This document shows positions 499 through 63,408 of a stretch of 64,000 nucleotides of DNA, piece by piece. The stretch spans positions 1 to 64,000 of the IMG/VR virus record IMGVR_UViG_3300043411_000942; one strand, written 5' to 3'. Position numbers and translations under genes: made by a program. Each line of letters starts with the position of its first letter. Positions within the stretch are counted from its first letter, which is position 1. The notes below the pieces were generated by a model that was given only the letters and a program-made list of their open reading frames with translations, was not told the DNA's origin and did not search any database.

Positions 499-2157
499 TC
501 ACTCAGTGCTCATTTCTACGGTTGCCAAGTCCTCTGGGATCTTACCGCTGGTGGCAAGTCCAGTGATCAGCCGATTGATCTGACTCCTCTTAGCCGCATC
601 CAGTGGTCCAGCCCTACGAGGGCTTGGTAGCCGTAAAGTAAGGAACAATGACTCGGTAAGTGTGAGTCGCATGGGAGTTGTATCGAGCAGCTTCTTCGTT
701 GCGGGGCCTATTCCGTAGAGGTCTGGTCCGAACTCCACAACATTGAGGTACAGCTCTAGGATCTGAAACTTGGAGAGGTGGCTCTCTAAGTCAATCGTTA
801 GGAAGGCCTCTTGAACCTTTCGCCCAAGGGTCTTGGATCTCGCTAGCCATAGGTTTTTGGCGAGTTGCATGGTCAGGGTACTTCCTCCACGCAAGGGCTT
901 CTCAGCCTTCAGGTTAGCCGCAATAGACGACACCAAAGCCTCTCGAATAAACCCATGGTGTAGGAAGAAGGCCCCATCCTCCGTGGTCAGTAACGCTGTA
1001 ATTACGTTTGGGCTAATCTCTTGAAGAGGGACCCAGTCCTTTGTCTTGGACCCTGACACCCTACTCGTTTCACCGTTAGCTCCGACTTGGTACTGAAAGG
1101 AGTCTTTTAGGCTAGCTACCGCAGGGGATACGGTAGACTTACAACCCAGATTCCACCGTAGCTTAACCTCTGGCTTCAACTCTAGGTCAAAGTCAAAGCT
1201 CCCCGTATAGGTGGACCCAAGTAGTATAGGAGTTTTTAGTTCTGTTGGCAGTGCTGAGAACCAAGCACTGCAAGTCTCCGCCCCCCACACCCTCCTTTTT
1301 TCGAGGTTGAAGTGAAGCGTTGCCGAGTCAATTCGAACTCGCTGATCGGAACTAGTAAGTTTATCTAGGCCTACTGGTCCCACTTCGATTGACTTGAACG
1401 TCGTAGGTAAGCAGTTGCCTTGATGATCCGTGTGTAATTGCTTTGAGCACACCACGAGAGACTCCAACGTGCCGAGTATCCCCTCTGGTGTTTGCTCTAC
1501 CTTCATACCTGCGGCAGCTAACCCGGCCCCAAAGGCACTCGTAGTAATCGACCCTACTTTGAGGGTCTTATTCGCCAAGTGGGCCGTGACCTTTTGAAAT
1601 GAGACCTTACCTAGGGTATGCCCCATCACTTGCCCTCTAGGCGTAAACTCCCCGCTATCTAGAAGTACTTGAGAGCCTGTCCGGGTGAGAGTCACACCCT
1701 TCGCGTCAAAGTCTCCTCTGGGGTGGTAGCCACTAACCGTCTCAGCCACGACAGCTTGAGACCCAAAACGCACCCCACCTAGAGTCGCGAAAGACTCTTC
1801 GTACGTAGCGTAAACCTCCAGGTCTTCCCCAGTGACTAGGTACCCATCACTTTTCTCATCGCCTTTAGCTCCCTTTGGCTTCTGACTCAGAGCTATATTG
1901 ACGCTACCACCCTGCAAGTGAACTTGCTTTGTGTCTCGCCACACATAGACCTTCGGGAAGCTACCCTTCAGCCAGCCCCGATTAACCGTCACGCCTGTTA
2001 GGAGCACTCCGCCTCTTAGGGGAGCTACTATCTCCACTTTCGTTACGGTTACCCCTGACTTTTCATTGAGGTAAGCTCGAATAGCAATGGGAGCCCCAAA
2101 CCAAAATGCCACTAGGGTAATGGCGAGACCAATCAAGAAGGCGTACTTTTTATTCAT
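499..2157 (-). CDS. Membrane-anchored monofunctional peptidoglycan transglycosylase (GT51/MtgA-like C-terminal domain)
   Basis: GT51 motifs EDGAFFLHHG, GGSTLTMQLAKNL, RKVQE and ILELYLNVVEFG. N-terminal transmembrane helix follows the likely start MNKKY (2157), which overlaps the stop of the upstream gene. No transpeptidase domain. Confidence 0.9.
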   Translation of the reverse strand: MNKKYAFLIGLAITLVAFWFGAPIAIRAYLNEKSGVTVTKVEIVAPLRGGVLLTGVTVNRGWLKGSFPKVYVWRDTKQVHLQGGSVNIALSQKPKGAKGDEKSDGYLVTGEDLEVYATYEESFATLGGVRFGSQAVVAETVSGYHPRGDFDAKGVTLTRTGSQVLLDSGEFTPRGQVMGHTLGKVSFQKVTAHLANKTLKVGSITTSAFGAGLAAAGMKVEQTPEGILGTLESLVVCSKQLHTDHQGNCLPTTFKSIEVGPVGLDKLTSSDQRVRIDSATLHFNLEKRRVWGAETCSAWFSALPTELKTPILLGSTYTGSFDFDLELKPEVKLRWNLGCKSTVSPAVASLKDSFQYQVGANGETSRVSGSKTKDWVPLQEISPNVITALLTTEDGAFFLHHGFIREALVSSIAANLKAEKPLRGGSTLTMQLAKNLWLARSKTLGRKVQEAFLTIDLESHLSKFQILELYLNVVEFGPDLYGIGPATKKLLDTTPMRLTLTESLFLTLRLPSPRRAGPLDAAKRSQINRLITGLATSGKIPEDLATVEMSTE

Positions 2158-2752
2158 TATTCCTCGGGGCACGACGGCCGTTGTGGACCCGGAATCCCAT
2201 ATCTTCGCCGTCTTCGATGCATGGGTGCATCGGCACTGCACCGCAGTCAGGGCATGCAACCTCAATGTTGAGTAGCTGCAAGTCCTCATTGCGGAACCCT
2301 ACAACCGCAGCGAGTAAACGAGCAACAGCCGCCTGTTTTACAGCCTTACTTTGGGTACCTGTTGCCCACCCATGGTAGGATGTACCTCCAATATCCAAGA
2401 CTACCTCAGTAGTGAATGTCAAATTGTCTTCGGGTCCTGTGCGAGATGACTCATACCTTGGGGTGGAGTTGGCTTTGTTTTGGCAGTATAGGGCTAGGAC
2501 CTTTACTGCTACGTCGTGGCGAGACTGCAAGTACTTCGCTGTAGCTAATTGAACAGGCCTCCACCCAAGCTCATAGGCATCGAAGATTACCGTATGAAGG
2601 CATGACAAGGAGACTCTATTCTCCGCCAACCTATGTAAATAAGCCTGGTGTAGCTCGGGTGGGAGGACATTGGTAGAATTTGCCCAAGATTGAACAACCC
2701 GCTCAAAGTCCTTTGCATTGAAGCCCTCAAGTTGTCGAAGGTCTAAGCTCAT
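2150..2752 (-). CDS. dsRNA-binding-domain (dsRBD) protein with C-terminal Cys/His zinc-finger-like motif
   Basis: VKVLALYCQNK..TPRYE..RTGPEDNLTFTTEV...GWATG..SKAVKQAAV matches the dsRBD pattern. C-terminus CPDCGAVPMHPC..HNGR. Start taken as MSLDL. Confidence 0.65.
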   Translation of the reverse strand: MSLDLRQLEGFNAKDFERVVQSWANSTNVLPPELHQAYLHRLAENRVSLSCLHTVIFDAYELGWRPVQLATAKYLQSRHDVAVKVLALYCQNKANSTPRYESSRTGPEDNLTFTTEVVLDIGGTSYHGWATGTQSKAVKQAAVARLLAAVVGFRNEDLQLLNIEVACPDCGAVPMHPCIEDGEDMGFRVHNGRRAPRNNE

Positions 2753-4148: not shown

Positions 4149-5366
4149 ATGCTAAGTGAACTTGAGATTCAGCTAGTAACCAAGTATATCTTGAGCCTCG
4201 ATGAGCGATCAGACCGCTATGGGGATGAGTTGGTAGACCACGTACTCCATCGCGTATCCTATCTCAACTATGATGATGGGGTCGATTGGGACACCTATGG
4301 AGCTATCTGCTCGTTTAGGGATGCGTTTGAAGATGAAGCACGAGTGGCCTTTGTTGAGAGAGTCCTCCAAGGAGATAGCCCACAAGTAAGTGCCAAACAA
4401 CCCGATGCCCCATGTCACATTCTGGCTGCGAGTCAATTTGACATCAAGACTATCGACCTCGTATTCAAAAGGGCTCAGGAAATAGAGCATTCGACAACTG
4501 AGAGACTTCTACACAAGCTACAGGGTAAGACCTTGGCTTGCGTTTTCTATGAGCCGTCTACCCGAACATCCTCCAGCTTCATTGCTGCAATGGGTAAGCT
4601 TGGTGGGAACGTGATACCCATCACACAAGGGGTCCAGTACTCAAGTGTTTCCAAGGGTGAGTCGCTAGAAGATACGATCGTCACCTTGGGTCAATATGCA
4701 GATGCAATTGTTCTTCGTCATCCTACGGTAGGGGCTTCAGCTCTTGCGGCTAGCGTTAGTCCCGTGCCAATCATCAATGCAGGGGATGGTATTAGTGAGC
4801 ACCCCACGCAAGCTCTTCTAGACCTCTACACGATCCAAAGAGAATTTGGGCGTACCTCCAACCTTAAGGTAGCCTTTGTAGGGGACCTTGCGAATGGACG
4901 GACGATCCACAGCTTAGCTGCACTCTTAGCGCTCTACCCAGGAAATGAGTTCTCCCTGGTATCCCCATTCCTACTGAAGCTAAGTCATGATTCGGCTCCT
5001 TACCTGCGAATCAAAGACAAGGTAACCCATGAGATTCACGTAAAGGATAGCCTGGTAAAGGCTGAGGAGGTCTTGGCAGAGGCAGACGTGGTCTACATGA
5101 CGCGAATCCAGAGAGAGCGGTTCGGGTTCCTAGAGAACTACTCTGAGGTAAAGGACTCCTGCATCCTCACGGAGGAGCTAGTAAGGAAGCTCAAGCCCTC
5201 GGCACGTATTCTACACCCCCTCCCGCGAGTCAACGAGATTCCAAGGGAGATCGACTCTGACCCTAGAGCGGCCTACTTCCGAGAGGTCAAAATGGGGCTT
5301 TACGTGAGGATGGCCCTCCTAGACCTAACAATGGGGTCTACCTCCCCTTGGCTACCCAACCTATAA
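4149..5366 (+). CDS. pyrB: Aspartate carbamoyltransferase catalytic subunit with an N-terminal extension of about 85 aa
   Basis: FYEPSTRT, SKGESLEDT, LRHP, INAGDG..EHPTQALLD, GDLANGRT, YMTRIQRER and HPLPR motifs. Confidence 0.96.
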   Translation: MLSELEIQLVTKYILSLDERSDRYGDELVDHVLHRVSYLNYDDGVDWDTYGAICSFRDAFEDEARVAFVERVLQGDSPQVSAKQPDAPCHILAASQFDIKTIDLVFKRAQEIEHSTTERLLHKLQGKTLACVFYEPSTRTSSSFIAAMGKLGGNVIPITQGVQYSSVSKGESLEDTIVTLGQYADAIVLRHPTVGASALAASVSPVPIINAGDGISEHPTQALLDLYTIQREFGRTSNLKVAFVGDLANGRTIHSLAALLALYPGNEFSLVSPFLLKLSHDSAPYLRIKDKVTHEIHVKDSLVKAEEVLAEADVVYMTRIQRERFGFLENYSEVKDSCILTEELVRKLKPSARILHPLPRVNEIPREIDSDPRAAYFREVKMGLYVRMALLDLTMGSTSPWLPNL

Positions 5367-43239: not shown

Positions 43240-43849
43240 TTGAACTAGGGTGTCCGGTTTAGGTGGTGGGCTTAGGGCGTGGTTGTGTGTACCAAACGAG
43301 GATACGACAGTGTCGATTGAGTTTTGAGGTTACAAGCTCCTTTAGAGACGCTCGGTCGACTACCGTGAACTTCGCCCTCAAGATTGTCTTACAGCTGCCA
43401 GAGATAAGCCCGTCTGTAACAAGGTTCTTGAAGAGCGTCCTACAGTACAGGGGCACATGGTATAGCTCGTTGACGTCTATCCCCCCGCATAGAGCCTCTA
43501 GAGTCACCGGCTGCGGCTCTAGTAGGAGACGTTTGATAGCAGTCTTCGCCCCCAACATTACTCGCCTAGACCTCTTGGGTACAGGCTCAACGTCGTCATT
43601 ATCCATCCCAAGAAAGTTCGTCGGTAGTGGCATTCAGAAACTCCGGTAAGGTTGTATGTGAGGTATACACCAGTCGCGAGGTCGAAAGATCACTAAAGTG
43701 CGCCAGACGTAGACGATTTCTAACATCACCGTCACTTCTGAAAAGGGTGTAGTACCGACAAGTTAGCGAGGGGGTGAAGCGACTCATGTTACATCCACCC
43801 CTCCTGGCCCCCCTTTGAAGGTGTAGAGGAGAGTGAAGGTGAGGACCTA

Positions 43850-44160
43850 GGGAGAGACCTATGGGGGATGGTCAGACATGGAGAGAGGAGTCAGACAGAG
43901 ACCCTCCCCTGGTCGTCCTAGAAGAGACAGAGAGAGGAGCCACCACCCTCACACGGACCTTAGCCCCCTATGAGAGACCCCAAGACCCATCATGGGGGAG
44001 TGAGGACCTTGGAGAGTCTACCCTAGTCTTCGGTCCTGTTGCCCTGCCCCTTGTGAGTCTAGTCTTTGTGAGTCTTTCTGCTCTGAGTCTAGTCTTCGGT
44101 TTGAGTCCCCCAGACCCCATCTAGTCTTTCTGTTCTGAGTCCCCCAGACCCCCGTATACC
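43850..44160. repeat. Intergenic repeat cluster (CTAGTCTT x4, TGAGTC x5, TGAGTCCCCCAGACCCC x2); candidate origin or protein-binding array
   Basis: CTAGTCTT at 44023, 44059, 44089 and 44121; 17-mer at 44102 and 44137; AGAC-rich left half. Confidence 0.7.
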
Positions 44161-44688
44161 AAACCCAGAACAGCTCTCTCGCCATTAAAGTCCAGAGACC
44201 TTAATTACAACCTTGTTGGTACGGGTTTTGCCGACGACTACAAGATCCAGGTACCTGTAAGAGTATACGGGAAACTAGCTAGTTACAGCCGACCCACATA
44301 GAGGCCGTTTTACCGTGCAATCAAGGCCCTAACAACTTCGGAGTATACGCTACAGTAAAGCGTAACGTAGGTCTCGTAGTCGCCTGGAATCGTGTCCTTA
44401 GGGAAGGCCACTTGAAAGTCCTTCCAAAGTGACATAGCGACAGACTCCACTTTGAAGTCTTGAGTTCCATGGCGTCTTACATTCTCAGTTGCAGCTTCCG
44501 TAGCCCAACGGACGACGTTCATCATGCAACTTACATCGATAGGCTGGGTCACTTCTTGAACCCAGCCCGCCCTTGTTCCCGTTGCCGTCGAAGCTCTTCC
44601 CGCTTCTTCTCTCGGATACGGGGAGTGAGGAAGATGGTGTTCTTGTCGACTAGGACGGGTGTTTGGGAGTTGTAAGTCTTCGGCTCTT

Positions 44689-44829
44689 TCACTCGGCAGC
44701 CCCCTCACGGAGGGCGTTGAGGCGGTCCTTTCGGATGCAGTTGCGGTTGTGCTTGCGGTCAGCACGACGGCGGGTCTTGCAGCCATCGCTGCTGTGGTTG
44801 GCCTTGGCGATCTTCTTCCAGGTGTTCAT
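44689..44829 (-). CDS. 46-aa Arg/Lys-rich peptide (below the ORF-track cutoff)
   Basis: MNTWKKIAKANHSSDGCKTRRRADRKHNRNCIRKDRLNALREGAAE; ATG 9 nt after promoter motif 44839-44864. Confidence 0.65.
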   Translation of the reverse strand: MNTWKKIAKANHSSDGCKTRRRADRKHNRNCIRKDRLNALREGAAE

Positions 44830-53858: not shown

Positions 53859-54329
53859 ATGACGATGACAAAGGAAGAGTTGCTCGCGTGTATTGAGAAG
53901 AAGGTCACTGACCTTGCCACTATCGCTGCCGGGAAGGCACGGTTGGAGGGGCAGGAGAGGGCCTTCATTGCTGAGCTGCTTGCGGCTCATGGGAAGGGAC
54001 CCCACATGGTGCTGGGTAAGCCCAAGTTCATCTTCACCAGCAAGACAGGTAACGTCTACATCTCTGACCCTCGCGGTACCATGAAGGGTGTCAAGCGAGG
54101 CCCCCGTAAGCCCAAGGTGGCTCCTCCGGTGGAGACGGTGGCTGAGGTTCCGATGGCTGCGGCTGTTACCGCCTCGGCTGAGGAGGAGGCTCCTGAGGCT
54201 CCTGAGGATGAGGCTCCTGAGTCGGGTGGCTTCACGGCTGAGCAGCTGGCGGACAAGCCAGAGGATGCCTTTGAGGGCTCGGAGGATGAGGATGATGAGG
54301 ATCCTCTCGCTGGACTGGACCTCGACTGA
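53859..54329 (+). CDS. Protein with a basic KRGPRKPK segment and a very acidic C-terminal tail; possible nucleoid-associated protein
   Basis: Promoter at 53811-53836, AAGGAG SD, strongly biased codons (GAG/GCT/AAG). Confidence 0.7.
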   Translation: MTMTKEELLACIEKKVTDLATIAAGKARLEGQERAFIAELLAAHGKGPHMVLGKPKFIFTSKTGNVYISDPRGTMKGVKRGPRKPKVAPPVETVAEVPMAAAVTASAEEEAPEAPEDEAPESGGFTAEQLADKPEDAFEGSEDEDDEDPLAGLDLD

Positions 54330-54336
54330 GATGACT

Positions 54337-54372
54337 GGGGTGTAGGAGAGCTGGAACTCTCTCCTACACCCC
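54337..54372 (+). other. Strong hairpin without a U-tract (processing/stabilising site or weak terminator)
   Basis: ggggtgtaggagag...ctctcctacacccc. Confidence 0.65.
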
Positions 54373-54479
54373 CTTAGAGGGCAGAAGACTGAGCACACTG
54401 CATGGTGACCTAGGAGAGCTAGGTACGGCTTGTTGTGTGGCCTGTGAAACACAGTGCGCTCATTCTCCTGCCCTCTAAG
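54373..54479 (+). ncRNA. Unrecognised structured RNA motif, copy 1
   Basis: Closing stem of about 25 bp around the core ATGGTG-[acctag GAGAG ctaggt]-ACGGC-N10-GCC-TGTGAAACA. Strand inferred from flanking genes. Confidence 0.7.
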
Positions 54480-54493
54480 AAAGACCCGATTAT

Positions 54494-54577: not shown

Positions 54578-54587
54578 ATTACACTCA

Positions 54588-54685
54588 GGAGTAAAAGATT
54601 GAGCCTATTGAATGGTGTCCTGGGAGACCCAGGGACGGCGCATGTATGTCCGCTCATGAAACACAATAGGCTCGTTCTTTTGCCC
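54588..54685 (+). ncRNA. Unrecognised structured RNA motif, copy 2
   Basis: Closing stem of about 20 bp around the core ATGGTG-[tcctgg GAGAC ccaggg]-ACGGC-N12-GCT-CATGAAACA. Confidence 0.7.
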
Positions 54686-54852
54686 CTCAGGAGGCCCCAA
54701 TGCTCTGCGGTTACTGCCTAGGTCATTCAGTACGCTGAGGACACGGCCTACGCCCACGTCGCTCTAGCGGCCTCATGAAGTGTACACCGTACTCTTCCAA
54801 GAAGTATTCGCTAGGATCGTCAACGCCACCCAACTGTACTACTGAGTAACCC

Positions 54853-55026
54853 ATGTTCAAGCTAATTCTACGCCCACGATACGACTCCGACAACACCTAC
54901 CCGAGCGATATCACCATCCTCCAGACAGAGGACGGTCACTTGTCGATTGACTTGGGCGATCGAAGGATTGAGGTAGACAAGAACGACATTAGCAAGCTCA
55001 GTAAGTTGCTTGACTTGAGTCAATAG
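54853..55026 (+). CDS. 57-aa hypothetical protein (below the ORF-track cutoff)
   Basis: MFKLILRPRYDSDNTYPSDITILQTEDGHLSIDLGDRRIEVDKNDISKLSKLLDLSQ. Confidence 0.5.
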   Translation: MFKLILRPRYDSDNTYPSDITILQTEDGHLSIDLGDRRIEVDKNDISKLSKLLDLSQ

Positions 55027-55029
55027 CCC

Positions 55030-55240
55030 TTAAGGGTTAGCCCTGAGCGTACGTAGTAGAGTGTGGGTCACCTGAGACGTGACCCCTCTAAAACCGCGTG
55101 ATTATCTTTTCGATTACCGGTAAGAGCCCAAAACCGCGTATTCAGTTAGCGTATGGTCATGGTGCGGCGGTAAACCCCAAACTAAAGACTATCCAAGACA
55201 GACTATCCAAGACAGACTAGACTACCCAAGACTACCCCTC
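55030..55240 (+). repeat. Promoter motif followed by a non-coding hairpin and AAAACCGCGT / AGACTA(T/C)CCAAGAC repeats
   Basis: TTAA 55030, CGTA 55052, hairpin gggtcac-ctgagac-gtgaccc from 55065; repeats at about 55090, 55130 and 55185-55238. Confidence 0.65.
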
Positions 55241-56408
55241 TTCAACGACCCAAAATCCCTTTCCTACAGCAACGACCAGGGTCAGAAAATTTCTAGGGGA
55301 AATTTTTTGAGGGCCCAGAAAACTCAAAGAGCATGGCAACGAGTTTCCGATTCACTGCAACTGCAAATCGAAATGGCATGGGGGCCAAGAACCCTGGGGT
55401 ATACAACACCTGCACCTGCCACCCGATACAGTGGGGGGCTAAGAAGGCAGCCCGTCGAGCCCGGAGACGGATCTCCAAGCAAGTCATCCTAGAGGGGTGT
55501 GGAGAGTTGACATGAGGGGGCTGACTGCGATGGAGAGTGAAGTGCTTTCTGAAGACTCGCGAATCGAGGATGACGTCTACCTCAATCTTCTCGCAGAGCC
55601 GCTAGACCCGTCCGGTGGCGGCAACATGTCGAGCGAGATCGCAGCAACGCGTGAGAGGCTTACCGTGCGCGGTTGCCTGGAGCTATTTGTGTTTACCTAC
55701 TCAGACGGATCTGACGACTCGACTTGGCGCATCACCTCTCGTGGCCGTCTCGCTCTCCTTTGCCACCAGGCCCTGAAATGAACTACCTCGAAAAGTTGAA
55801 CGTACGGCTGGATGAGGCTCACTACGTGAGTTGCCCACAAGACTTCAAGGGTGACTTGCTACGAGCTTACGAAGTAGCTGACAACCCCAAGGCTGAGGCA
55901 GCGTTTTTCATCGCGTGCCATCATATGGCTTTGTTGGGAGGGCACAAGGACGTAGCCGTGCTCTTTGCGGATCTTGTGACCCTGATTAAGTAGATGAGGA
56001 AGCCCAAGCCACGTAAGAACAGAGCATACAGACGCAGAGGCAAGCGTGCGTGGTACGCCGCGATGAAAGCCACCGGGGAGTACCTGCACAGGAAGATGAG
56101 GGAGCCGAGCATCACACGCAGTATGTTCTCGATAACCCAGGTGACAGAAGTGGAGGCTACTCGATGACTACTTGGAAGACGACATGGTTGGCCAGGCTAC
56201 ACGTTCGGTTCCGTAAGTGGTTGCTGCCGAGGCTGCACCATCCCATCTGCCCCTTGTACCGGTACGAGTTCATCCGGATGCTAGAGCTATTCCACCATCG
56301 TAAGCCGCACACGCGATCCGCCCTGTGGGGTATGGAGGCTCAGTGTTTTTGTCCCAGAGCACTGAAGTAGTAGTTAAGTCTCCAGGCTCAAGCTACGTAG
56401 GACTCTAC

Positions 56409-63337: not shown

Positions 63338-63408
63338 CCCTGCTTTCAGACTTGGTTCTTTTGTCTATTGTAGTTAAAGACACCTCCAAGCCGTACGTAG
63401 GTCTCTAT

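What the first reader, a model, noticed from the sequence alone, without database searches (positions are those of the whole stretch)
55030..55300. Promoter firing into a non-coding repeat tract (primer/R-loop origin or sponge RNA)
Seen: at the position where other copies of the promoter have an ATG (55065), a 7-bp hairpin starts instead. It is followed by AAAACCGCGT twice, an A/C-rich tract with five AGACTA units (AGACTATCCAAGAC twice in tandem) and an AT-rich patch at about 55285-55308. This independently fits the predicted +1 position. Established: T4 origins use promoter-derived R-loops. Inference: a replication origin primed by this transcript, or an RNA with repeated protein-binding sites.
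Basis: partly seen in the sequence, partly recalled or inferred. Interest (0 to 1): 0.6.

Follow-up and report, generated by a model that had tools for sequence, protein, structure and literature searches.

The report
Untranslated repeat leader before small phage gene
A weak copy of this giant phage's own promoter points into about 270 bases of non-coding sequence that lead to a real small gene, so it looks like a regulatory RNA leader, not a replication origin.

Summary
The window is the start of a 233-kb fragment of an uncultivated huge phage. This phage has at least 51 copies of a two-part promoter (GTTAAG-N16-TACGTAGG) with an ATG 8 nt after it, which implies leaderless mRNAs. The copy at 55030-55057 is a true but bottom-tier match. 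Where the ATG would sit, a 7-bp hairpin starts. A second hairpin follows, then a 95-nt A/C-rich repeat stretch, then an AT-rich hairpin. The repeat stretch is the least foldable 95-nt window of the whole record on either strand (C/G 29:7). At 55333 starts a 60-aa gene that is conserved in three related phages and is predicted, at low confidence, to form one arginine-rich helix.

The tract is therefore an untranslated leader or intercistronic RNA. My pick is a Rho-loading (rut-like) attenuator or another single-strand RNA platform. The R-loop origin reading gets no support. There is no skew inflection, the AT patch is ordinary, and the transcript is C-rich and G-poor. The tract is also absent from more distant relatives. 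No RNA data exist.

A second AGACTA tract lies at 44.0-44.1 kb on the minus strand, also on the sense strand. Interest is moderate to low.

The parts
55030..55057 (+). Weak copy of the phage's own two-part promoter (CTTAAG, 16 nt, TACGTAGT)
   Evidence: It scores 15.3 bits on a matrix built from 42 ATG-linked copies and ranks 65 of 79 sites. No site in 3 shuffled genomes reaches this score. It is conserved in G001.
55065..55085 (+). 5' terminal hairpin (7 bp, 7-nt loop) starting at the predicted +1
   Evidence: -10.6 kcal/mol, z -3.0. G55065 occupies the position of the A of the ATG in consensus promoter copies.
55093..55121 (+). Second hairpin. Together with the first, the 61 nt 55065-55125 fold far better than shuffles.
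   Evidence: z -3.9; 0 of 200 shuffles fold as well.
55090..55139 (+). Two copies of AAAACCGCGT, 40 nt apart (55090-55099 and 55130-55139)
   Evidence: 0.03 expected in the window; no shuffle has 2.
55186..55234 (+). AGACTA repeat array (five units; 14-nt unit x2.4). Copy number varies between close relatives.
   Evidence: One unit fewer in G001. Deletions of 13, 6, 4 and 1 nt in contigs of other runs.
55186..55280 (+). A/C-rich, G-poor, unstructured stretch (rut-like). The best 78-nt window is 55188-55265.
   Evidence: MFE -0.6 kcal/mol, z +2.2; least structured of 23,286 95-nt windows on both strands. C/G 29:7 with regularly spaced C; one of 17 such regions in the record.
55279..55316 (+). 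AT-rich hairpin or inverted repeat (arms 55282-55293 and 55299-55310) closed by GGG/CCC. A pause-type consensus lies at 55298.
   Evidence: Not a canonical intrinsic terminator, because no U tail follows the stem.
55333..55515 (+). Real 60-aa gene, predicted (low confidence) to form one arginine-rich helix. The tract is its leader.
   Evidence: Homologues in G001 (92% identity), G002 (57%) and as the C-terminal domain of a 152-aa ORF in G003. AlphaFold predicts helix 32-57 with the rest disordered, mean pLDDT 59.7. No Pfam or PHROG family.
54853..55026 (+). Upstream 57-aa gene. It forms one mosaic cassette (54853-55497) with the tract and the 60-aa gene.
   Evidence: Contigs from three studies hold 54853-55497 as one block. 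In them the 57-aa gene carries its own promoter (tables 7 and 8).
44014..44127 (-). Second tract of AGACT[AC] units (8), on the sense strand of a 520-nt non-coding stretch at the 3' end of a minus-strand operon
   Evidence: The 10-mer AGACTAGACT occurs only in the two tracts. A variable orthologue exists in G001.
43812..43901 (-). C-rich, G-poor window (C/G at least 4.1) downstream of the second tract, on the sense strand
   Evidence: Only three sense-strand, non-coding windows in the record are this extreme: this one, 55188-55268 and 122545-122668.

Best explanation
The tract is untranslated RNA, not an origin. It is a 268-nt leader for transcripts from the weak promoter at 55030-55057. For read-through from upstream it is an intercistronic spacer. 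It sits in front of a conserved 60-aa gene whose product is predicted (low confidence) to form an arginine-rich helix.

The RNA has three modules:
1. A 5' terminal pair of stem-loops (55065-55121). These are inferred to protect the 5' end.
2. A 95-nt A/C-rich, G-poor stretch made partly of AGACUA units, with essentially no secondary structure.
3. An AU-rich hairpin about 17 nt before the AUG.

I think the unstructured stretch is a landing platform for a factor that binds single-stranded RNA. My pick is a Rho-utilisation (rut-type) attenuator that makes expression of the downstream gene or genes conditional. A ribosome standby or translation-enhancer site is the closest alternative of the same class.

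Shown: the motif match, the hairpins, the composition, the lack of structure, the reality of the downstream gene, and presence only in close relatives. Inferred: transcription from this promoter, the start at G55065, and any role of Rho or the ribosome.
For: Promoter family and the position of +1. Other copies without an ATG drive tRNA arrays or leadered genes, and several of those also start with hairpins, for example the 71-nt leader at 152817.

The 5' 61 nt fold with z -3.9, while the repeat part has z +2.2. That part is the least structured of 23,286 windows on both strands. G001 keeps this property despite having one unit fewer: -0.2 kcal/mol over 82 nt.

Rut-type criteria of RhoTermPredict (PMC6407284) are met. 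The 78-nt window has C/G 4.14, the C residues are regularly spaced, and a hairpin and a G-11 G-10 Y-1 G+1 pause consensus lie within 150 nt.

No conserved ORF lies in the tract. The 40-aa GTG ORF 55098-55220 is frameshifted by the 13-nt indel in G001 and in the other relatives. There is no tblastx match to anything.

The downstream ORF is a real gene.

Canonical intrinsic terminators are not enriched in 47-64 kb: 12 found against 15.4 expected.

Two of the three sense-strand, non-coding, extreme C>G windows of the record are the two AGACTA loci.
Against: - There are no transcript data. No run is on record as RNA, and contigs cannot show RNA ends.
- The promoter copy scores at the bottom of the family and lacks the A/T-rich stretch upstream of the -35-like element.
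- The host is unknown, so the presence of Rho is unknown.
- The pause hairpin has an AT-rich stem, not a GC-rich one.
- Repeat number varies among relatives that are more than 93% identical.
- In G002 the same gene has only a 50-nt spacer with a Shine-Dalgarno sequence. The leader is therefore dispensable for the gene family.
- In the 44-kb tract the AGACTA units themselves sit in purine-rich context, not C-rich context.
- A 159-nt perfectly conserved run is not exceptional between these two genomes: there are 158 runs of at least 150 nt.

Confidence 0.4 is for the class (a transcribed untranslated leader acting at the RNA level). For Rho specifically it is about 0.2.
Confidence: 0.4

Rival explanations
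1. A stand-alone or leader-embedded decoy or regulatory RNA. The repeated AAGACU(A/C) units are binding sites for a protein: the co-encoded arginine-rich small proteins, a host RNA chaperone, or Rho itself, which the RNA would titrate.
For: The same units, including the 10-mer AGACTAGACT, occur only at two loci and are on the sense strand at both. The stretch is extremely single-stranded. Each locus shares a transcription unit with a small arginine-rich protein: the 60-aa gene at 55333, and the 46-aa and 47-aa genes at 44549-44829. Only 19 of 408 predicted genes have such a window. A helix spanning residues 32-57 is predicted, at low confidence.
Against: No binding data exist. The 60-aa and 46-aa proteins are not detectably homologous. 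Unit number is unstable among close relatives. No terminator defines a discrete RNA. The tract is absent from G002 although the protein is present there. The link to arginine-rich genes was noticed after the fact.
Confidence: 0.2
2. No function. A fast-evolving spacer produced by replication slippage of an A/C-rich unit, lying behind a decaying relic promoter whose leaderless gene was lost.
For: Weakest-tier promoter score. Copy-number variation is confined to the repeats. The tract is absent from G002, G003 and G005. The whole tract does not fold better than shuffles (z +0.12). Another copy of the family, at 64021, also seems to have lost its ATG.
Against: The G-poor composition continues about 45 nt beyond the repeats. 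The 5' hairpins are significant and start exactly at the predicted +1. A second locus shares the 10-mer. The head 55065-55185 is identical in G001 while the gene just upstream is 87% identical.
Confidence: 0.2
3. A DNA-level element: iteron-like binding sites for a phage protein (an origin of the lambda or SPP1 type, or a partition site), possibly activated by transcription. The reader's specific version is a promoter-primed R-loop origin as in T4 oriF and oriG.
For: Direct repeats lie about 50 nt from an AT-rich inverted repeat. A second locus with the same units lies 11 kb away, which recalls paired origins. The phage has T4-like replication and recombination genes, namely UvsX and a clamp loader. 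T4 origins use promoter transcripts (PMC3016281).
Against: The skew minimum is at about 126 kb, with no inflection at 55 kb. The AT patch is ordinary and far from the start. The RNA is C-rich and G-poor with few G clusters. Unit spacings of 14, 14, 5 and 10 nt are not phased with the helix. Repeat number is unstable. No initiator-like gene lies nearby. Both tracts are sense-oriented, which DNA sites do not need to be. The tract is absent from more distant relatives.
Confidence: 0.1
4. The tract encodes a small protein: the 40-aa ORF with a GTG start at 55098-55220.
For: Positive codon-usage score in my crude gene finder.
Against: The 13-nt indel in G001, and in the contigs of three runs, shifts its frame and changes its length from 40 to about 66 aa. 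It has no Shine-Dalgarno sequence, no family match and no tblastx match.
Confidence: 0.03

Closest known systems
Rho-dependent attenuators in long untranslated leaders and intercistronic regions (for example lambda tR1 between cro and cII; the E. coli rho, mgtA and corA leaders)
   Same: A ribosome-free, unstructured, C-rich and G-poor stretch of about 80 nt with regularly spaced C. A hairpin or pause site follows it. It lies between a promoter or upstream gene and the regulated gene.
   Different: Rho dependence is untested and the host is unknown. The stretch is partly built from tandem AGACUA units. The pause hairpin is AU-rich.
Lambda pL-nutL-N leader (an arginine-rich-motif protein encoded behind a leader of about 220 nt that carries its own RNA target)
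   Same: Promoter, then a long structured leader with a hairpin, then a gene for a small protein predicted to carry an arginine-rich helix.
   Different: No boxA on the sense strand. The hairpin has a 7-bp stem and a 7-nt loop, not a boxB pentaloop. There is no sequence or family similarity to N. Binding is untested.
T4 oriF and oriG (middle promoter plus a downstream unwinding element that forms an R-loop)
   Same: A phage-specific promoter firing into non-coding DNA, in a phage with T4-like recombination and replication genes.
   Different: No A+T-rich unwinding element next to the promoter. The transcript is C-rich. There is no skew signal. A gene follows the tract.
Type III toxin-antitoxin loci (ToxIN: promoter, tandem RNA repeats, terminator, protein gene)
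   Same: The order of parts: promoter, tandem non-coding repeats, hairpin, gene for a nucleic-acid-binding type of protein.
   Different: The units are 14 nt, not about 36 nt. The protein has 60 aa and matches no ToxN, AbiQ or CptN family. No canonical terminator is present.
Ribosome standby sites and CA-rich translation enhancers (for example the tisB leader)
   Same: A single-stranded stretch upstream of a start codon that has a poor Shine-Dalgarno sequence and lies behind a hairpin.
   Different: The distance and mechanism are untested. The homologous gene in G002 uses an ordinary Shine-Dalgarno sequence instead.

Membership tests
This phage's own leaderless promoter family (GTTAAG-N16-TACGTAGG-N7-ATG) | TTAA element 17 nt before the nCGTAG core, scoring above chance on the family matrix | tested here: met
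   15.3 bits. No site in 3 shuffled genomes reaches it. It is, however, just below the weakest training site (15.6), and the training median is 30.6.
This phage's own leaderless promoter family (GTTAAG-N16-TACGTAGG-N7-ATG) | ATG of an ORF 5-7 nt after the -10-like element | tested here: not met
   a hairpin starts there instead. The same is true of the copies that drive tRNA arrays or leadered genes.
T4 oriF/oriG-type R-loop origin | [quoted passage not shown] | tested here: not met
   The first 216 nt are 49.5% G+C. The only AT patch is 30 nt long, lies about 220 nt downstream, and is one of 116 equally AT-rich regions.
T4 oriF/oriG-type R-loop origin | Location at a shift of compositional skew or at a transcriptional divergence | tested here: not met
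   the cumulative skew minimum is at about 126 kb in both G000 and G001. Genes on both sides of 55 kb are on the + strand.
T4 oriF/oriG-type R-loop origin | Persistent R-loop; autonomous replication of a plasmid carrying the segment | not testable with these tools
   Needs infected cells.
Iteron-type origin or centromere | Three or more direct repeats, phased with the helix and stable in number, next to an initiator or partition gene | tested here: inconclusive
   Repeats are present. Spacings are 14, 14, 5 and 10 nt. The number varies among close relatives. Neighbouring proteins match no family.
Rho-utilisation site / Rho-dependent attenuator (RhoTermPredict criteria, PMC6407284) | 78-nt window with C/G above 1 and C every 11-13 nt | tested here: met
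   in 55188-55265, C 29 and G 7 (ratio 4.14), and the spacing pattern is matched.
Rho-utilisation site / Rho-dependent attenuator (RhoTermPredict criteria, PMC6407284) | Unstructured and ribosome-free RNA | tested here: met
   (MFE -0.6 kcal/mol, rank 1 of 23,286). No conserved ORF. The absence of ribosomes is inferred.
Rho-utilisation site / Rho-dependent attenuator (RhoTermPredict criteria, PMC6407284) | Pause site (GC-rich hairpin or G-11 G-10 Y-1 G+1) within 150 nt downstream | tested here: inconclusive
   The consensus is found at 55298 and a hairpin spans 55279-55316, but the stem is AT-rich.
Rho-utilisation site / Rho-dependent attenuator (RhoTermPredict criteria, PMC6407284) | Termination depends on Rho (sensitive to bicyclomycin) | not testable with these tools
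   The host is unknown.
Lambda N / nut antitermination | boxA plus a boxB hairpin in the leader; N-family protein | tested here: not met
   No boxA on the + strand in the tract. The hairpin geometry differs. No Pfam match for the 60-aa protein.
Type III toxin-antitoxin (ToxIN-like) | Tandem repeats of about 34-36 nt, and a ToxN, AbiQ, CptN or TenpN toxin | tested here: not met
   The units are 14 nt. The 60-aa protein has no family match.
Any described RNA family (Rfam 15), tRNA or tmRNA | Covariance-model or ARAGORN match | tested here: not met
   only sub-threshold chance hits, and they lie outside the tract; none.

The most novel reading that the evidence does not exclude
The two AGACUA-repeat tracts (55.2 kb on the plus strand, 44.1 kb on the minus strand) would be a new kind of phage RNA module. 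In it, deliberately unstructured repeat RNA made early in infection binds and titrates an RNA-binding factor. That factor would be either host Rho (a Rho decoy that protects phage transcripts) or the arginine-rich small proteins encoded in the same operons (an N/nut-like or type-III-TA-like RNA-protein switch).
Probability: 0.12. Interest if true: 0.7.

Novelty: new member of a known kind. Interest (0 to 1): 0.33.

Why it matters
If the leader reading is right, the locus is an ordinary regulatory device: a long untranslated, rut-like leader. It sits, however, in an unusual setting, a huge uncultivated phage whose early genes are almost all leaderless. That setting gives a clean natural contrast between leaderless and leadered transcripts from one promoter family. 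The stretch is the least foldable 95 nt of a 233-kb record, and its repeat unit recurs at only one other, sense-oriented locus. This makes it a concrete test case for how huge phages end or gate early transcription. It does not give a replication origin for this phage.

Tried and rejected
- Rfam (E-value mode, 43-57 kb) and ARAGORN found nothing in the tract.
- blastn against GenBank phages found no match.
- tblastx and blastn-short of the tract against G000, G001, G002 and G003 found only G000 itself and its orthologue in G001.
- Local and global alignment of the 55-kb and 44-kb tracts was no better than shuffles apart from the short unit. The shared words TGTGGGTC and CAAAACC(G)CGTA lie at similar spacing (67 and 68 nt). 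I treat this as possibly chance.
- The whole-tract fold is not better than shuffles: z +0.12. The 44-kb region gives z +0.84.
- The protein-pattern scan of metagenome contigs for the 60-aa family found nothing. The DNA-pattern scan for the AAAACCGCGT pair gave 120 unrelated loci.
- Scanning IMG/VR for the promoter consensus gave only single chance hits. Two hits lay in real relatives (G004, G005), but these do not use the promoter and lack the tract.
- G002 and G003 also lack the promoter family.
- Sequencing runs: none is on record as RNA. Only contigs could be laid, so neither expression nor RNA ends could be read.
- The structure of the 60-aa protein came out at low confidence. The Atlas look-alikes are unnamed.
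- Host inference from the carbamoyltransferase and the terminase failed.
- Sigma-factor search: one protein with region 4 only and one weak region 2 hit. This is not enough to assign the promoter to a phage sigma factor.

Full report
**Context.** The window is bases 1-64000 of a 232,937-bp IMG/VR virus record, G000 (CheckV completeness 49%, G+C 51.7%). A relative that is 95% identical over 77% of G000 is G001 (379,936 bp, direct terminal repeats). More distant relatives are G002, G003 and G004/G005. The UvsX-like protein is 74% identical in G002 and 63% in G003. G004/G005 show about 67-71% nucleotide identity in the structural genes. The phage carries GroEL, exonuclease V, UvsX-like, clamp-loader and terminase genes and large tRNA arrays at 127-152 kb. 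The nearest GenBank record is an uncultured 485-kb phage at 45% terminase identity. The host is unknown.

These features are in the sequence:
- a hairpin at 55065-55085;
- two AAAACCGCGT copies, at 55090 and 55130;
- five AGACTA units at 55186-55234, with the 14-nt unit twice in tandem;
- an AT-rich inverted repeat at 55282-55310.

Each exceeds chance. The hairpin has z -3.0. The 10-mer pair has 0.03 expected copies in the window. The tandem array has a TRF score of 68.

**The promoter.** The strict pattern TTA[AG], 16-18 nt, ACGTAG[GTA] occurs 34 times, and 25 of these have an ATG 5-7 nt later (19 at exactly 7) that opens an ORF of at least 37 aa. With a looser core there are 51 ATG-linked copies with consensus GTTAAG-N16-TACGTAGG. 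The base before the ATG is nearly always a pyrimidine. This fits transcripts that start at the A of the ATG, which means leaderless mRNAs (inference).

The copy at 55030-55057 reads CTTAAG, 16 nt, TACGTAGT. On a matrix built from 42 ATG-linked copies it scores 15.3 bits. That is below the weakest training site (15.6; median 30.6) and ranks 65 of 79 genome sites, but no site in three shuffled genomes reaches it. It is therefore a real member of the family and probably a weak one. G55065, the first base of the hairpin, sits exactly where the A of the ATG sits in the consensus copies.

Copies without an ATG are not unique to this locus. Those at 127651, 129247, 131129 and 151065 drive tRNA arrays. 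The copy at 152790 has a 71-nt leader that also begins with hairpins.

**What lies downstream.** The ORF 55333-55515 (60 aa) is a real gene.
- G001 keeps it at 92% identity.
- G002 has a 61-aa homologue (57% identity) behind a 50-nt spacer with a Shine-Dalgarno sequence.
- G003 carries the same motif (CHPxQWGAKK..RR.RRR.SK..I.EG) as the C-terminal domain of a 152-aa ORF.

AlphaFold, at low confidence (mean pLDDT 59.7), predicts a disordered N-terminal half and one arginine-rich helix at residues 32-57. Pfam, PHROGs and the Atlas give no function.

The tract itself has no conserved ORF. The 40-aa GTG ORF at 55098-55220 is frameshifted by a 13-nt indel in G001 and in contigs from three other studies. 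Nothing matches the tract by tblastx. The tract is thus a 268-nt untranslated leader. For read-through from the 57-aa gene that ends at 55026 it is an intercistronic spacer. Relatives in public runs hold 54853-55497 as one mosaic block, and in them the 57-aa gene has its own promoter.

**Anatomy as RNA.**
- The first 61 nt form two hairpins (z -3.9; 0 of 200 shuffles fold as well).
- The repeat stretch 55186-55280 has an MFE of only -0.6 kcal/mol (z +2.2).
- Among 23,286 windows of 95 nt on both strands of the record (mean -24.2, sd 5.7 kcal/mol), this stretch is the single least structured one.
- Its composition is A 34, C 34, G 12, T 15. The best 78-nt window has C/G 29:7 with regularly spaced C, and is one of 17 such regions in the record.
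- G001 keeps the property with one unit fewer.
- A hairpin at 55279-55316 follows, with a pause-type consensus at 55298.

These are the published sequence criteria for a Rho-utilisation site followed by a pause site (PMC6407284). Canonical intrinsic terminators are not enriched in 47-64 kb: 12 were found against 15.4 expected.

**A second tract.** AGACT[AC] units cluster at only one other place: 44127-44014 on the minus strand, in a 520-nt non-coding stretch at the 3' end of a minus-strand operon. The 10-mer AGACTAGACT occurs only in these two tracts, in both G000 and G001. Both tracts are on the sense strand of local transcription.

The 44-kb stretch also contains an extreme C>G window on the sense strand (43901-43812). 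Only three such windows in the record are both sense-oriented and non-coding, and the two AGACTA loci are two of them. Each tract shares an operon with small arginine-rich proteins, but these proteins are not detectably homologous. Outside the short unit the two tracts do not align.

**The origin reading.** Cumulative GC skew has its minimum near 126 kb in both G000 and G001, where gene orientation switches. It shows nothing at 55 kb. The AT patch is short, lies 220 nt from the predicted start, and is one of 116 equally AT-rich spots. T4 oriF and oriG need an unwinding element within the minimal origin of about 100 bp (PMC3016281).

The predicted RNA has negative GC skew (-0.48 over the repeats) and few G clusters. 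This is the opposite of R-loop-prone sequence (established knowledge). The unit spacings (14, 14, 5 and 10 nt) are not phased with the helix, and the unit number changes among relatives that are more than 93% identical. I therefore rate the R-loop origin at about 0.05 and any DNA-level iteron role at about 0.1 in total.

**Conservation.** The tract is present in every close relative seen: G001 and contigs from three studies. The head 55065-55185 is identical in G001, and all indels fall inside the repeats. A perfect run of 159 nt is not exceptional between these mosaic genomes, which share 158 runs of at least 150 nt. The tract is absent from G002, G003 and G005, which also lack the promoter family. 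No RNA run is on record and only contigs could be laid, so transcription remains untested.

**Verdict.** The most likely reading (0.4) is a transcribed untranslated leader that acts as RNA. It has 5' protective stem-loops and an unstructured C-rich platform ahead of a conserved gene whose product is predicted to form an arginine-rich helix. A rut-type attenuator is my specific pick (about 0.2), with a ribosome standby site as the nearest alternative. The rivals are a repeat-RNA decoy or switch (0.2), a functionless slippage spacer behind a relic promoter (0.2), a DNA-level origin or iteron element (0.1) and a small ORF (0.03).

Noticed in passing
window 54368-54484 and 54578-54698 (+): Two paralogous structured RNA elements of about 110-120 nt lie just upstream of the finding (MFE -58.9 kcal/mol with z -6.6, and z -3.2). 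They are 71% identical to each other. With their G001 orthologues, 11 of 37 predicted pairs show compensatory double changes. There is no Rfam family, and no further copies in G000, G001, G002, G003 or G005. They are candidates for a new structured RNA or RNase III-type processing hairpins.
   Followed up: yes
whole record; in the window for example 48679, 50658, 53501, 56374, 59058, 62278, 63374 (+) and 15303, 39832, 44864 (-): At least 51 copies of a two-part promoter GTTAAG-N16-TACGTAGG have an ATG 8 nt after it, which suggests that most early genes are leaderless. Relatives G002, G003 and G005 lack the motif.
   Followed up: yes
window 43786-44312 (-): A 520-nt non-coding stretch at the end of a minus-strand operon. 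It has a conserved head, eight AGACT[AC] units, two tandem 34-nt repeats, and then a CT-rich tail with several GGTCTC words. It is highly variable in G001 (85% identity with large indels).
   Followed up: partly
window 54340-54369 (+): A perfect 11-bp hairpin lies about 10 nt after the stop codon of the 156-aa gene (53859-54329). No U tail follows it.
   Followed up: no
G000 127651-152817 (loci L029, L030): The same promoter family, without an ATG, sits in front of tRNA arrays (127651, 129247, 131129, 151065) and of a gene with a 71-nt hairpin-rich leader (152790).
   Followed up: partly
L026:21-48 (G000 64021-64048): A promoter copy whose ATG seems to have been lost, when compared with the paralogous cassette at 63374.
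   Followed up: no
window 54853 and 55497: Mosaic breakpoints. Contigs from three studies share 54853-55497 as a block but have other sequence on both sides. In them a promoter directly precedes the 57-aa gene. In run X1 a contig ends at 55142 in an Illumina adapter and contig depth drops across the tract. Contigs do not allow this to be interpreted.
   Followed up: partly
window 499-2289 (-), 4149-5366 (+); G000 155129-156766, 182433-183050: Host-like genes in the phage: a glycosyltransferase-51 (PBP-type) domain protein, an aspartate/ornithine carbamoyltransferase, GroEL, and a 205-aa protein with only sigma-70 region 4.
   Followed up: partly
G000 122545-122668 (-): The third sense-strand, non-coding window with extreme C>G. 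It is also the second least structured 95-nt window. It lies in a 568-nt gap upstream of a minus-strand gene.
   Followed up: no
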